NCBI RefSeq assembly: GCF_003704095.1
Contig: NW_020847604.1
Span: forward strand, 186,001-250,000
Origin: Pocillopora damicornis
Taxonomy: Eukaryota
Reading direction: 5' to 3'
Length of the DNA: 64,000 nucleotides
Each line of letters opens with the position of its first letter. Within the stretch, counting starts at the first letter, position 1. Positions 40,524-57,459 of the stretch are shown here, in pieces. The notes beneath the pieces are model-generated. The model searched no databases. It was not told where the DNA came from and was given only the letters and a program-made list of their open reading frames with translations. A program made the translations under genes and the position numbers.

Positions 40524-43500
40524 CTACATCCCTCGGAATGATTCCCCAAGGGTGATCGCTTCTTTGTTCTGCGTGTAAAACAACGCGTGGGTCTTGTAAA
40601 ATGTTACAATTTCCGTCAAACCATCGAACGCATGCTTGCCAATAACGTAACGACCGCTTGGTGTCAGTTCTATGGGAAAATGGCGAATCCTAAAGTTTAA
40701 AACAGGAAAAAGGAAACATTAACGAAAATGCAATGGTAGTGATAATAATAACAACAACAACAATGATAATAATAACAATAATAGTAATAACAATAATAAT
40801 AAATATAATTTGACTTGAATTGCCGAACGTCAGCTTTTCTCTGGTTCTCATTTATTACCGATACGTCTAGCGATAAATTAGACGACGCTAACCCTTGTAG
40901 CAAAATTACGAAATTGCAGAACTAAGCGAGAAAATGAAATAGTACTTACTTTCCGCCATACTTGACCGATAGCACGAAAGAAGCAAACTAAAAATACGAA
41001 AAAAAAGTCGGTGAGGGCAAGAATTCACGCTCGCTAGAAAGGAAATAGGGACATTTTTATTGTCTGTTTTAATTCTTTTTACCTTCTGAGTGCTCTCTCG
41101 TATCAAGTAGTCGAGTTCTTTGGCGCTCTGTTGGACAGAAAACAAATCAAAATTACAAAATTTCATCATTTTAGTTATTCTGTTATGCACAATAACTTCC
41201 TTTCACTTTACCATAACATCAACTGTCAATTCGACATAACAACCAATGTTAGATTAAAAAAAAAGACAATAAAAATATGGAAGAACTATGTCCACCACAG
41301 GCCTGCAAGCCGTCAGTTCAGACAGATGTTTTCATCGACTCTCAGTACGATCGTATTCTTTTTAGCGAACCAGTGCACAAAACATTATACATTCGTGTTG
41401 CCGTGTTGTCGTTTTGGATCGGTTTTCCTGTATCAGTATGAGTTAACATTAAAAAATTGAACATATTTATATCTTACTCTCATCATAAGTTCCTCGCACT
41501 TCTGACGTGACATTTTCCCGTAATACCACAACTCGTCTCCTGTGACAGCACAAATAACACAAGCATCAGATACACATGCTTCCACAAAAAGGGAAATTGT
41601 TTTGGCAATTGTTCTTGGAATATTCTGACGGAATTTTACACCAACTAAGACATCTAACAACATGACTTACCGAAAGAACTGTGCCTTTCTCGCTGCTTGC
41701 TCTTTGGAGGCATTTCGTTGAGAGTTTCTTCCTACAAGTAACGAATGGAAAATTTCAACATCTATTACTGACAGTAATCGTAGAAATGCCGAAATGGCCA
41801 TCCATTTGTTGGCGAATGAGAATCCATCCGTTTTTTAGCGAGTAGTGTGTGTGACGCAGTGTTTAAGTGACGCAGTGCTCAACAGTCTTAATTGAAGTCT
41901 GCCTGCTACTGAAAGAGTTGAGTCAGTAACGACACCCCACTTTTGTGTTCCTCAGTCACTTCACCATCAAGCTTCTGTAATTTGACGTCCTGATTCACAG
42001 CACTTATAGTGATGTGCAAAATTCAATACCTCAACAATACAGTTTCTCAACTTGGTGATCATTTTTCGCCCCAGTAACGAAAGAGATCAAAATAGAAGAA
42101 AGAAGATTCGTCCACTTCACTCACACTTAGATTTCTAGCGGAGCGCGAAGAAGGGAATGACTCACCCGCCCACCTCCATCTTCCGTTAGTCCGCCGTTAG
42201 TCCATACCTTAATCTAACTAAGTAACAATGGGAGCGATTTGAAAAGAAATATTTTTTCATCTTCCCCTAAAATTTGAGCTTTCTTATCTAAGAGGTCCCT
42301 CCTTTTGAAAACCTCTGTCTTTTTATGAGTTCTTGTTTCACAAAATCTCCGTCTCGAAAGAAACTTATTACAACGGCTGATCACCGAGCCTTTAAAACTG
42401 GAGGTTGTCTTTGTCTTAAATTAACATTTTGGTTCAAGAAAACAGCTTATAGATGTGGTTTATTTTCAGAATGGACTAACATTAACATTATAGTACCTCA
42501 TCCTGTAGCAGTTCCCAGAAATCGCCTGGAGTCCATCCGACCACACCCTCTACATTCATTTTCCACCAACCCAAGGACTGTACTGCTAATAACTGGCCTA
42601 CTTCACCTTTGCGCACCGAGATGCAGTTTGAATTTTTTGTTGTAAAGTCTTCCCGCGCGAAGTAGTGTTCGTTCACCTTTCCTGGAAGAAAGAAGTCTTT
42701 CCTCAGAAGGACTCAAAAGGGGACTTAAAGTCACTTAACACCAGAAATAGAACGGTCTCTGGGGGAATTTTGATATTTCAAAAGTTACCAAAATATCATT
42801 AAAGCGGCCCGTGATATTGGAGATTATACGAGCGGGTCTTAGTCCCAAACACCTCACAATACACAATCTTTGTATTTGTGCTACGAGGCAAATTTAGTAT
42901 ACAAAGCACATATCTTTGTCTCTAAACCGGTAAACAATTTCTTTAATAACAAAATATGATAAAACATAAAGCCGCTCAAAAATCGCACTCATTCAACAGA
43001 GACGGAAACTGCGCAAACGTCATTAATAAGGGTCTAACGCTTAACCGATCTTGCGAGAGGCATGTTCAGCCAAGTTTTTTTGCTGTTGATGGTCACTTGA
43101 CAACCGTTAAAGCTGTTGATTGTTCTATGACTGAGAAATTCAGCCGTTTTCCATTCCCATCGCTTTCATTGTAGTCAGCTGAAGTGCACTCGTCTGTACA
43201 GCAACTTAAATTCAGCCTACAAGCCACAAAGCTTTCAGTATCATGAAGCGAATCAAGCGATGAGGACAATACTTCCCCTGCAAGTCACTCGCAGGGTTAC
43301 AACCCACATCGCGCATCTTCGACAGGAACGTCTCGATTAGCGTGACTCGACATCTCGGCCAACCAGTCGTAAACTTTCTTGGCTGAACTACTCCTATTTC
43401 AGCGAAGCTCACCCTTACGCGTTCTTGTAGGACTTTTTCCGCAGTTGATGTGCTCAACAATATGAAGCGCGCCGAAAGAGAGACAGATAAAAAGTCTGTT

Positions 43501-57400: not shown

Positions 57401-57459
57401 ACATCGACAACTTTCACATCGGCAATAACACCTCTCTCATTAGTGGATAACTGCCTCAT
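40524..57459 (-). CDS. SH3 and PX domain scaffold (Tks4/Tks5/p47phox-like) with 4 SH3 domains and a C-terminal Nck-like SH2, ~819 aa
   Basis: 22 phase-consistent exons: 57459-57358, 57217-57137, 55146-55089, 54570-54494, 52052-51946, 51749-51601, 51188-51066, 49902-49788, 49681-49585, 49407-49346, 47641-47556, 47119-47035, 46361-46317, 45197-45146, 44999-44760, 43995-43572, 42681-42497, 41731-41671, 41539-41478, 41127-41083, 40987-40950, 40689-40524. PX: VKVVDVEKRR...NYEYVLKVRW...IFRRYSMFFDLQ...IPELP...LPPVVSQSDTVLQFF. SH3s: EKNNTGWW..GFAPATFL; DDELTY..FGWW; GWVPTSLL; LGWW..GWTPGDF. SH2: WYYGKMSR...YLIRES...FVLSVKY..IRHFPI...YVIG. An in-frame upstream ATG at 57543 is possible. Confidence 0.88.
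40738..40806. repeat. (AAT/AAC)n microsatellite in an intron
   Basis: Direct. Confidence 0.8.
48942..49234. mobile_element. MITE with ~55-bp imperfect TIRs
   Basis: caattggtagtaatgtcgcaatctgattggccagtttgccg...gataa versus ttatc...ccggcagattggccaatcagatggcgacattaccgccaatcg. Confidence 0.75.
52315..52470. mobile_element. Degenerate SINE-like repeat fragment
   Basis: cccctggatgggatgacagtctatc...ccccagcatt resembles a widespread SINE central domain (recognition only). Confidence 0.4.
54376..54409. repeat. (TAA)n microsatellite
   Basis: Direct. Confidence 0.9.
55518..56668. mobile_element. Outer MITE (TIR catcaaatcaaagattcaacattccc / ggggacgttgaattttcaaattgattg) interrupted by an inner element at 55852-56621
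   Basis: Imperfect terminal inverted match. The inner element starts TA|CCGTATTTACTCGTGTATAAGTCGAC and ends ...TTTTTTACGG|CA, Tc1/mariner-like termini. Confidence 0.5.

What the first reader, a model, noticed from the sequence alone, without database searches (positions are those of the whole stretch)
40524..57459. PX-4xSH3-SH2 protein: a Tks4/5 scaffold fused to an Nck-type SH2 ('Rosetta-stone' adaptor)
Seen: 22 exons join in one open frame to give PX, two tandem SH3, a PPPRR motif, a Tyr-rich linker, two more SH3 and a terminal SH2. Known: vertebrate SH3PXD2A/B (Tks5/Tks4) and p47phox/NOXO1 have PX+SH3 but no SH2. Src-phosphorylated Tks5 recruits Nck via its SH2 at podosomes/invadopodia, and Tks proteins can organise NOX complexes. 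The SH2 here (WYYGKMSR...YLIRES...YVIGKHAF...FYKTHALF) is reminiscent of Nck SH2 (WYYGKVTR...YCIGQRKF...HYKKAPIF). Inference: this lineage may encode scaffold and pTyr reader in one chain, coupling tyrosine kinase signals to actin or ROS production. I do not know this architecture from bilaterians.
Basis: partly seen in the sequence, partly recalled or inferred. Interest (0 to 1): 0.8.

Follow-up and report, generated by a model that had tools for sequence, protein, structure and literature searches.

The report
Coral Tks-like scaffold carrying an SH2
This is a real, expressed coral gene for a membrane-targeted scaffold protein of the p47phox/Tks family that also ends in a phosphotyrosine-reading SH2 domain; the combination is conserved across corals, sea anemones and soft corals, sits beside an ordinary SH2-less Tks gene, and I found no paper that describes it.

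Summary
On the minus strand, 22 coding exons (all GT-AG) plus one 5' non-coding exon give an 847-aa protein. Its order is PX, tandem SH3 pair, PPPRR motif, tyrosine-motif linker, two more SH3, C-terminal SH2. A 3.4-kb RNA contig of a near-identical coral maps onto every exon. So it is one gene, not two.

- The same core (PX, tandem SH3, at least one more SH3, terminal SH2) is already in public protein sets of Scleractinia, Actiniaria and Octocorallia. They are auto-named SH3PXD2A/B or NCF1-like.
- It is not the coral's Tks4/5 orthologue. A second gene without SH2 (contig C3321) is much closer to vertebrate Tks5.
- The two C-terminal SH3 domains are p47phox/Tks-type, not Nck-type.
- An Nck origin for the SH2 is possible (best profile score, one shared intron) but unresolved in a tree.

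The PPPRR followed by an acidic residue matches the TKS4/5 autoregulatory motif. An invariant tyrosine lies six residues before it. The mechanism is inferred, not shown.

The parts
57721..57768 (-). 5' non-coding exon
   Evidence: First 48 nt of RNA contig L001 map here at 100%, then jump to 57613.
57358..57613 (-). Rest of 5' UTR and coding exon 1 (CDS 57543-57358, aa 1-62). Holds a 28-aa N-terminal extension and the start of PX.
   Evidence: Donor is gtacgt.
57137..57217 (-). Coding exon 2, aa 63-89: PX core with the RRYSMFFDL motif
   Evidence: aligned with p47phox PX.
55089..55146 (-). Coding exon 3, aa 90-109: PX, IPELP loop
54494..54570 (-). Coding exon 4, aa 109-134: PX
51946..52052 (-). 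Coding exon 5, aa 135-170: end of PX
51601..51749 (-). Coding exon 6, aa 170-220: linker and first half of SH3-1
   Evidence: Pfam SH3 on the exon..
51066..51188 (-). Coding exon 7, aa 220-261: second half of SH3-1 (GWW) and the short acidic inter-SH3 linker
49788..49902 (-). Coding exon 8, aa 261-299: SH3-2 (GWW)
   Evidence: Pfam SH3_1 at 34 bits on the exon..
49585..49681 (-). Coding exon 9, aa 299-331: end of SH3-2 and linker
49346..49407 (-). Coding exon 10, aa 332-352: IYASI tyrosine motif, then PPPRR (TKS4/5-type tandem-SH3-binding motif; the acidic residue that follows it is the first full codon of exon 11)
   Evidence: Y342, A343, S344, I345 and P348-R352 are invariant in 11 anthozoan proteins. 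The joint 49346/47641 is seen in 4 RNA runs.
47556..47641 (-). Coding exon 11, aa 352-380: Asp-Ser-Ser and a polybasic, serine-rich stretch
47035..47119 (-). Coding exon 12, aa 381-409: LEYATV tyrosine motif
   Evidence: Found through homologue P0037. Joints seen. Conservation.
46317..46361 (-). Coding exon 13, aa 409-424: PQYASVIPKHL(R) motif
45146..45197 (-). Coding exon 14, aa 424-441
44760..44999 (-). Coding exon 15, aa 442-521: linker with the invariant Y-x-N (KYENV). It has an alternative NAGNAG acceptor at 44999 or 44996.
   Evidence: Both acceptors appear in RNA contigs..
43572..43995 (-). Coding exon 16, aa 522-663: SH3-3 and a proline-rich linker
   Evidence: The joint 44760/43995 is seen in 4 RNA runs.
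42497..42681 (-). Coding exon 17, aa 663-724: SH3-4
   Evidence: Pfam SH3_1. Best PDB match is p47phox SH3.
41671..41731 (-). Coding exon 18, aa 725-745: linker with R-x-R-H-S-S
41478..41539 (-). Coding exon 19, aa 745-765: SH2 start (WYYGKMSR)
41083..41127 (-). Coding exon 20, aa 766-780: SH2 beta-B (YLIRES). The phase-0 intron after it is at the same position as in coral Nck.
40950..40987 (-). Coding exon 21, aa 781-793: SH2 beta-C
39775..40689 (-). Last exon: SH2 beta-D to the end (CDS 40689-40524, stop at 40524-40526), then at least 750 nt of 3' UTR

Best explanation
Shown. A single expressed gene (23 exons, about 18 kb) encodes an 847-aa adaptor of the p47phox-related organiser superfamily. 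Its parts, in order, are:
- a PX domain;
- a tandem 'super-SH3' pair with GWW in both halves and a short acidic linker;
- a TKS4/5-type PPPRR-acid motif;
- a linker with invariant Y-A-(S/T)-(V/I) and Y-x-N motifs;
- two further p47phox/Tks-type SH3 domains;
- a C-terminal SH2 with all the canonical phosphotyrosine-binding residues.
It belongs to an anthozoan-wide family and is a divergent paralogue that sits beside a canonical, SH2-less Tks-like gene.

Inferred.
- The PX domain brings the protein to phosphoinositide-marked membrane.
- The tandem SH3 pair is held closed by the internal PPPRR motif, as in TKS4 and p47phox. When open, it binds PPPR-type ligands such as the coral p22phox tail.
- The conserved tyrosines make the protein a tyrosine-kinase substrate, as the name Tks implies.
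- The built-in SH2 lets the same chain read phosphotyrosine, either on activated receptors or adhesion proteins, or on its own or a neighbour's phosphorylated linker.
- Recruitment that in vertebrates needs separate SH2 adaptors (Nck, Src, Grb2 on Tks4/5) would thus be partly hard-wired here.
For: Gene and transcript:
- Exon model, open frame and splice sites.
- Full-length RNA contig mapping exon by exon.
- Joints in 4 RNA-seq runs from 4 studies.

Domains:
- Pfam PX, SH3 x4 and SH2 on P0003 and P0037.
- The tandem SH3 aligns as one unit with p47phox tSH3, 72 bits.
- The PX matches p47phox PX.
- SH3-3 finds SH3PXD2A and SH3-4 finds p47phox.

Family:
- The PX + SH3 + SH2 domain set is in Porites, Stylophora, Nematostella, Paramuricea and many transcript contigs; Montipora and Exaiptasia have partial gene models.
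- The SH2 is among the best-kept parts: 63% coral-Nematostella and about 50% coral-octocoral.
- Arg alpha-A2, Arg beta-B5, Ser and His beta-D4 are invariant.

Motifs:
- IYASI-x-PPPRR is invariant and the following DSS nearly so. YA(T/S)V, YA(S/T)(V/I)IPKHLR and Y-x-N are conserved from corals to sea anemones.
- A PPPRR followed by an acidic residue is the described autoregulatory motif of TKS4 and the proposed one of TKS5 (PMC12730246).

Context:
- Vertebrate Tks5 pY557 binds Nck and TKS4 pY508 binds the Src SH2 (PMC7663256).
- A p22phox gene with a PPPRGPR tail is present in this genome.
Against: - No binding was shown. AF2 on 11 sequences left all linkers below pLDDT 50.
- The complex test of tandem SH3 with the PPPRR linker gave no answer.
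- Asp right after PPPRR breaks the 'strong forward' tSH3 motif of PMC12730246, so any clamp may be weak or in reverse mode.
- Which kinase, which pTyr ligand and which cellular structure are involved is unknown.
- The canonical paralogue may carry the classical Tks or NOX-organiser role, which would leave this gene with another job.
- SH3-4 is absent in sea anemones and SH3-3 is not detectable in octocorals, so only part of the architecture is ancient.
Confidence: 0.6

Rival explanations
1. Rosetta-stone fusion. An ancestral anthozoan Tks-like gene captured the SH2 exons of Nck, so the protein does in one chain what Tks5-pY557 plus Nck do in vertebrates: it links Src signals to N-WASP and actin.
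For: - Coral Nck is the best of 11 coral SH2 domains against the family profile, 68.5 bits.
- Nck1 is the only chain of a protein with a single SH2 domain among the 60 rows shown in the PDB profile search.
- The phase-0 intron after the beta-B strand is at the same position in coral Nck and in this gene.
- The Tks5-Nck interaction is documented (PMC7663256).
Against: - SHP2 C-SH2 scores almost the same, 65.6 bits.
- A single-sequence PDB search puts Grb2 and PLC-gamma-1 above Nck.
- The ML tree gives a solid family clade (95/92) but no supported sister.
- This gene's SH2 has two further introns that coral Nck lacks.
- SH3-3 and SH3-4 are not Nck-like.
- Grb2, Src-family and several other coral SH2 domains were not sampled.
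Confidence: 0.25
2. It is the anthozoan NADPH-oxidase organiser, the functional p47phox/NOXO1 equivalent. The tandem SH3 binds the p22phox PPPR tail, the PPPRR-DSS polybasic stretch acts as an autoinhibitory region, and the SH2 adds a tyrosine-kinase input to ROS production.
For: - PX + tSH3 + PPPRR followed by Ser-Ser and basic residues resembles the p47phox AIR.
- A p22phox gene with a PPPRGPR tail is present.
- NCBI names the octocoral member 'neutrophil cytosol factor 1-like'.
- The Atlas's nearest named cluster is NCF1, score 0.88.
Against: - The canonical SH2-less paralogue is an equally good or better candidate. The Nematostella protein that Kawahara & Lambeth proposed as the Nox2 organiser is of that SH2-less kind, judging by its printed sequence.
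- No p67phox-docking C-terminal proline-rich region was identified.
- No interaction data exist.
- The Atlas score is below its own reliability mark.
Confidence: 0.25
3. Artefact: two neighbouring genes (PX-SH3-SH3 and SH3-SH3-SH2) joined by the reader or by read-through, or a decaying SH2 remnant with no function.
For: - RNA libraries also cover the introns at low depth, so some unspliced RNA or DNA is present.
- Logan contigs are assemblies, not single molecules.
Against: - All central joints are present in 4 runs from 4 studies, at several-fold intron depth.
- Five independent intron-less contigs from five samples and species each carry one ORF running to the SH2. Pfam lists PX on four of them; blastp finds it at residues 6-128 of the fifth.
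- No stop or frame break occurs in 847 codons.
- The SH2 is one of the most conserved parts and keeps every pTyr-binding residue.
Confidence: 0.02

Closest known systems
TKS4 / TKS5 (SH3PXD2B / SH3PXD2A), vertebrate podosome and invadopodium scaffolds
   Same: - N-terminal PX.
- First two SH3 domains as a tandem unit.
- PPPRR followed by an acidic residue, upstream of SH3-3.
- Further SH3 domains separated by long disordered, proline- and tyrosine-rich linkers; four SH3 in all, as in TKS4.
- These are the best non-cnidarian sequence matches.
   Different: - It has a C-terminal SH2 that the vertebrate Tks proteins recovered here do not carry.
- It is only about 35-39% identical in PX-tSH3.
- The coral has another gene much closer to Tks5, so this is a paralogue and not the orthologue.
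- Its tyrosine motifs (Y-A-S/T-V/I) differ from Tks5 pY557 and TKS4 pY508 (YEEI).
p47phox (NCF1) and NOXO1, NADPH-oxidase organisers
   Same: - PX + tandem SH3 with the GWW signatures. The tandem aligns as one unit, 72 bits.
- A proline-arginine motif followed by serines and basic residues, like the autoinhibitory region.
   Different: - It has two extra SH3 domains and an SH2.
- No recognised p67phox-binding tail.
- The PX is closer to Tks5 (39%, 81 bits by blastp) than to p47phox (32 bits by phmmer). These are different scoring scales.
Nck1 / Nck2 adaptors
   Same: - SH3 domains followed by a single C-terminal SH2.
- The SH2 is of similar type (WYYGK..., Y-x-IG-x-x-x-F).
- Best-scoring coral SH2 against the family profile, and one shared intron position.
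   Different: - Nck has no PX and has three SH3 domains of another type.
- The coral has its own ordinary Nck gene on C21.
- A sister relationship of the SH2 domains is not supported in the tree.
CrkII and Src-family kinases (intramolecular pTyr-SH2 clamps); a resemblance in how it may work, from my own knowledge
   Same: One chain carries both an SH2 and conserved tyrosine motifs in a flexible linker. Phosphorylation could therefore close or cross-link the molecule.
   Different: No homology outside the SH2 and SH3 folds. The clamp in the coral protein is only a hypothesis.

Membership tests
p47phox-related organiser superfamily (NCF1, NOXO1, TKS4, TKS5) | N-terminal PX domain | tested here: met
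   Pfam PX on the 99%-identical P0037 and on P0003, 37.8 bits against a cut-off of 21.6. phmmer finds p47phox PX structures. Single exons alone fall below threshold.
p47phox-related organiser superfamily (NCF1, NOXO1, TKS4, TKS5) | Two adjacent SH3 domains able to form a tandem unit: short acidic linker and a GWW triplet in both | tested here: met
   One continuous 72-bit alignment with the p47phox tandem SH3 (7YXW, 1NG2). GWW is in both halves and the linker is acidic. The criteria come from PMC12730246.
p47phox-related organiser superfamily (NCF1, NOXO1, TKS4, TKS5) | Internal PPR-type motif that the tandem SH3 binds (autoregulation) | tested here: inconclusive
   The PPPRR motif is present and invariant in 11 anthozoan proteins. 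Binding was not shown: AF2 linkers stayed below pLDDT 50 and the complex test gave no answer.
p47phox-related organiser superfamily (NCF1, NOXO1, TKS4, TKS5) | Binds the proline-rich tail of p22phox | not testable with these tools
   Only the partner's presence was checked. A p22phox gene lies at G000:C2487:86738-86932 (52 bits, over the cut-off), and its tail contains PPPRGPR.
TKS4/TKS5 orthologue group (SH3PXD2A/B) | Architecture of PX plus four or five SH3 domains and nothing else | tested here: not met
   A C-terminal SH2 is present. The vertebrate SH3PXD2A/B hits have no PF00017.
TKS4/TKS5 orthologue group (SH3PXD2A/B) | It is the genome's closest relative of vertebrate Tks4/5 | tested here: not met
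   Fish Tks5 used as query finds G000:C3321 (~131622-123020, minus strand). Its PX exons are 48-68% identical, and it has six SH3 domains and a stop after the last one. The window gene's PX is 39% identical.
TKS4/TKS5 orthologue group (SH3PXD2A/B) | PPPRR followed by an acidic residue between SH3-2 and SH3-3 | tested here: met
   The sequence reads ...IRSPPPRRDSS... at aa 345-355. The TKS4 346-350 and TKS5 400-404 motifs are described in PMC12730246.
Nck adaptor family | Three SH3 domains then one SH2, with no other domain | tested here: not met
   This protein has a PX and four SH3 domains. The coral's own Nck (SH3 x3 + SH2) is a separate gene on C21.
Nck adaptor family | The SH2 groups with Nck SH2 domains | tested here: inconclusive
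   - Profile scores: Nck 68.5, SHP2-C 65.6, Crk 49.9 bits.
- PDB: Grb2 54.6, PLC-gamma-1 54.1, Nck 51.2 bits for the single sequence; Nck1 59.6 bits for the profile.
- Tree: the placement is unresolved.
- One intron position is shared.
Nck adaptor family | The SH3 domains next to the SH2 are of Nck type | tested here: not met
   The best PDB hits of SH3-4 are p47phox SH3, and the only hit of SH3-3 is SH3PXD2A.
SH2 domain (PF00017), phosphotyrosine-binding competent | Pfam SH2 over the cut-off, plus Arg alpha-A2, Arg beta-B5 (FLVRES-like YLIRES), Ser beta-B7 and His beta-D4 | tested here: met
   SH2 scores 61.3 bits in P0003 and 63.6 bits in Nematostella P0022, against a cut-off of 21. R15, R34, E35, S36, H55 and F56 are invariant in the SH2 alignment A2. 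Actual pTyr binding was not tested.

The most novel reading that the evidence does not exclude
A tyrosine-operated organiser switch. The invariant tyrosine six residues before the PPPRR clamp motif (IYASI-x-PPPRR) is phosphorylated by a Src-type kinase. It is then captured by the protein's own C-terminal SH2, in cis or between molecules. This pulls the PPPRR out of the tandem-SH3 groove and frees the groove for p22phox or other PPPR ligands, while chaining molecules into a multivalent scaffold. Anthozoans would then gate a p47phox/Tks-type organiser by tyrosine phosphorylation read by a built-in SH2, where vertebrate p47phox uses PKC serine phosphorylation.
Probability: 0.15. Interest if true: 0.7.

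Novelty: new variant of a known kind. Interest (0 to 1): 0.5.

Why it matters
Tks and p47phox proteins are textbook scaffolds that are written on by tyrosine or serine kinases and then read by separate adaptors. Here a 'reader' domain has been kept on the scaffold itself across Hexacorallia and Octocorallia, that is, at least since the last common ancestor of living anthozoans. It sits next to invariant tyrosine motifs and to the family's autoinhibitory motif.

That gives a compact natural system for asking how substrate and reader functions were partitioned among adaptors early in animal evolution, and how NOX or actin organisers are switched on. Nematostella has the gene and is genetically tractable.

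It also corrects annotation. Public records call these proteins SH3PXD2A/B or NCF1-like and hide both the SH2 and the existence of two paralogues. The gain is moderate rather than large: domain shuffling among PX, SH3 and SH2 is common, and no function has yet been shown.

Tried and rejected
- **Wrong exon.** My first hand-picked exon near 45950 did not keep the reading frame. tblastn with P0037 showed the real exon is 47119-47035 and that 46317 joins directly to 45197. RNA joints confirm this.
- **Joined model not searched.** Searches used single exons by reference, or the natural 99%-identical transcript L001 / protein P0037. The joined model was used only inside scripts.
- **Complex prediction.** Tandem SH3 (aa 182-316) with the PPPRR linker (aa 328-372) gave no answer, score 0.02. 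This is neither for nor against binding.
- **AF2 on the full length.** With 11 sequences the domains fold, the linkers stay below pLDDT 50, and the SH2 is poorly modelled. It gives no information on docking.
- **Protein Atlas.** The whole protein lands near NCF1 and SH3PXD2A at 0.87-0.88, below the reliability mark. The SH2 alone gave only generic SH2 fragments.
- **Word search on the SH2 region of P0042.** It returned only family members and no outside SH2 sequences. A tree with labelled human SH2 families was therefore not possible. I used SH2 domains from the coral's own genome, named from my memory of their conserved sequences.
- **C3717 PX hit.** It is a class II PI3-kinase, not a Tks relative.
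- **Exon-level genome search with the SH2.** It favoured genes whose SH2 lies in one exon (Fer, Syk-like, Shc, Abl) and was not a fair test.
- **Distribution outside Anthozoa.** The 163-aa exon-16 query against 1.84 billion representatives found 26 proteins. The near full-length true relatives among them that carry a name are anthozoan, two longer hits are unrelated bacterial-type proteins, and most of the rest are short unnamed fragments. This says nothing firm about Medusozoa, sponges or bilaterian invertebrates.
- **No PX/tSH3 tree.** I held no NCF1 or NOXO1 sequences by reference, and without them the topology cannot tell an old duplication from an anthozoan one.

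
Full report
**1. What is in the sequence**

The window is AT-rich animal DNA. Earlier notes on this genome call it a stony coral. The closest named protein is from Stylophora pistillata, 85% identical. The assembly has 234,350,878 bases in 4,393 contigs. From memory that fits the published Pocillopora damicornis assembly; this is an inference.

Single exons on the minus strand, given to Pfam by reference, show two split SH3 domains, two whole SH3 domains and pieces of an SH2. 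I traced splice sites by eye and corrected the middle of the gene with homologue-guided tblastn. The result:
- 22 coding exons, every intron GT..AG;
- 2,544 nt of open frame, 847 codons;

I used exon references, or a natural transcript that turned out to be nearly identical.

**2. One gene, transcribed as one mRNA**

The model is 99.2% identical from end to end to P0037 (846 aa). P0037 is encoded by L001, an intron-less 3,407-nt contig of RNA run SRR5963052. L001 maps to the window in 23 blocks:
- a 48-nt non-coding first exon at 57768-57721;
- the 22 coding exons with my borders, mostly at 100% nucleotide identity;
- a 3' UTR reaching 39775.

RNA contigs of four runs from four studies were laid on 43900-49450. 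All of them carry the joints 43995/44760, 45197/46317, 46361/47035, 47119/47556 and 47641/49346. The sixth joint, between 45146 and exon 15, uses one of two acceptors three bases apart (44999 or 44996). All four runs show 44996, and two also show 44999. Skipped ends read CT..AC, which is GT..AG on the minus strand. Exon depth is several-fold (mostly 5- to 15-fold) above intron depth.

The 'two genes' rival is therefore all but excluded. The first ATG of the mRNA is at 57543.

**3. What the parts are**

- **PX.** It reaches the Pfam cut-off on full-length relatives and finds the p47phox PX structures.
- **SH3-1 and SH3-2.** They align as one unit with the p47phox tandem SH3, 72 bits. They have GWW in both halves and a short acidic linker. 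These are the features a 2025 study lists for tandem 'super-SH3' binding in this family (PMC12730246).
- **PPPRR motif.** Thirty-odd residues after SH3-2 comes ...IYASIRSPPPRRDSS... That paper describes PPPRR at TKS4 346-350 as the experimentally supported autoregulatory ligand of the tandem SH3. It also describes a homologous TKS5 400-404 PPPRR followed by an acidic residue. The coral motif has the same form.
- **SH3-3 and SH3-4.** SH3-3 finds only SH3PXD2A in the PDB. SH3-4 finds p47phox SH3 first and is most like the protein's own SH2-proximal relative, SH3-2. The C-terminal half is therefore not a piece of Nck.
- **SH2.** It is canonical: WYYGKMSR, YLIRES and His in beta-D. These residues are invariant across the family.

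**4. The family**

The exon-16 query against 1.84 billion representative proteins returned 26 hits, among them full-length proteins with PX, SH3 and SH2. Word and profile searches then found the same core in:
- Porites lobata and P. evermanni;
- Stylophora;
- Nematostella;
- the octocoral Paramuricea;
- many transcript contigs.

Montipora and Exaiptasia are represented by partial gene models. The Montipora model starts inside the PX, and the Exaiptasia model is cut off just after the start of its SH2.

Five intron-less contigs from five samples each carry one ORF running to the SH2. Pfam lists PX on four of them, and blastp finds it at residues 6-128 of the fifth. Public names are 'SH3 and PX domain-containing protein 2A/2B', 'neutrophil cytosol factor 1-like' or 'uncharacterized'.

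The architecture varies between groups. Sea anemones lack SH3-4, and octocorals lack a detectable SH3-3. The old core is PX, tandem SH3, at least one further SH3, and SH2.

The SH2 is among the best-conserved parts (63% coral-Nematostella, about 50% coral-octocoral), which argues for function. Linker motifs conserved from corals to sea anemones are IYASI-x-PPPRR (usually followed by DSS), (L/V)-x-Y-A-(T/S)-V, Y-A-(S/T)-(V/I)-IPKHLR and Y-x-N. From my own knowledge, the Y-A-(S/T)-(V/I) form recalls the EPIYA-type motifs that bind Csk and SHP2 SH2 domains. That is a lead, not a test.

**5. It is a paralogue, not the coral's Tks**

Reading the supplement of Kawahara & Lambeth 2007 changed my view. 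Their Nematostella 'p47phox-like' protein is a PX + five-SH3 protein that looks very like vertebrate Tks5 and has no SH2. The paper never mentions SH2.

With fish Tks5 as the query, the coral genome shows such a gene on contig C3321:
- PX exons 48-68% identical to Tks5;
- two split SH3 domains;
- one exon with four more SH3 domains, ending in a stop.

The window gene's PX is only 39% identical to Tks5. So anthozoans have two family members, and the SH2-bearing one is the divergent one. Whether the duplication is anthozoan or older I could not test, because I held no NCF1 or NOXO1 sequences by reference.

**6. Is the SH2 'Nck-type'?**

For:
- The coral's own Nck (SH3 x3 + SH2, contig C21) is the best of 11 coral SH2 domains against the family profile, 68.5 bits.
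- Nck1 is the only chain of a protein with a single SH2 domain among the 60 rows shown in the PDB profile search.
- Both genes have a phase-0 intron at the same place after the beta-B strand.

Against:
- SHP2 C-SH2 scores 65.6 bits.
- The single-sequence PDB search ranks Grb2 and PLC-gamma-1 above Nck.
- The ML tree gives the family its own well-supported clade (95/92) with no supported sister.
- Grb2, Src-family and other SH2 domains were not sampled.

The names of the coral SH2 genes rest on my memory of their conserved sequences. Verdict: possible, not shown.

**7. How it probably works**

Shown: the parts and their conservation.

Inferred from the family's biochemistry (PMC12730246; PMC7663256):
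- PX-mediated membrane recruitment.
- A tandem SH3 clamped on PPPRR and, when open, bound to PPPR ligands. The genome has a p22phox gene whose tail reads ...PPPRGPR....
- Tyrosine phosphorylation of the linker.

In vertebrates those phosphotyrosines recruit the SH2 domains of Nck (Tks5 pY557) and Src (TKS4 pY508). Here an SH2 sits on the same chain. It could anchor the scaffold at phosphotyrosine sites, or bind its own or a neighbour's phosphorylated linker.

The invariant tyrosine lies six residues before the clamp motif, which suggests a tyrosine-operated release of autoinhibition. I could not test this. AF2 left the linkers disordered and the complex test gave no answer.

**8. Novelty**

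The protein is in public databases under misleading names. I found no paper in the held library that describes a PX-SH3-SH2 protein of this family. The library lacks most subscription journals, so an SH2 census could have listed it. I rate it a new variant of a known kind, of moderate interest.

Noticed in passing
window 44996-44999 (minus strand, acceptor of coding exon 15): There is a NAGNAG alternative acceptor. RNA contigs join 45146 to either 44999 or 44996, which adds or drops one Gln. Both forms occur in runs X6 and X18. L001/P0037 uses the shorter form, which is why it is 846 and not 847 aa.
   Followed up: partly
window 36028-37718: A minisatellite of about 100 copies of a 17-bp unit (82% matches). 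It causes the strong GC and AT skew of that stretch. It lies about 2 kb beyond the last base covered by the RNA contig, which ends without a poly(A) tail.
   Followed up: no
G000:C3321 ~123020-131622, minus strand (loci L020, L021): This is the coral's canonical Tks-like gene. It has five small PX exons 48-68% identical to fish Tks5, two split SH3 domains, then one 425-aa exon with four SH3 domains ending in a stop, and no SH2. The 'p47phox-like' Nematostella protein of Kawahara & Lambeth 2007 looks like the same kind, judging by its printed sequence.
   Followed up: partly
G000:C21 ~134880-136850, minus strand (locus L023): This is the coral Nck gene. One exon holds three SH3 domains and the first third of the SH2, and a second exon holds the rest. 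Its SH2 intron is at the same position and phase as the second SH2 intron of the window gene.
   Followed up: partly
Public models P0041 (Stylophora pistillata), P0017 (Exaiptasia), P0040 and P0039 (Montipora-like): Several public models look flawed or variable.
- P0041 lacks the 27-aa PX exon with the RRY motif and reads into the intron before SH3-4.
- P0017 breaks off just after the start of its SH2.
- P0039 and P0040 carry an extra stretch of about 62 aa before the IYASI motif. It may be an additional or alternative exon.
   Followed up: no
window 48715-48797 and intron 10 in general: Poly(A) RNA libraries also hold contigs that cover the introns at low depth. Two runs show an 81-bp gap without splice-site ends (GG..TA), which looks like an indel difference between coral genotypes rather than splicing.
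   Followed up: no
G000:C2487:86738-86932 (locus L008): A p22phox (Cytochrom_B558a) exon, 52 bits. Its cytoplasmic tail contains PPPRGPRS, a near match to the tandem-SH3-binding motif of human p22phox.
   Followed up: partly
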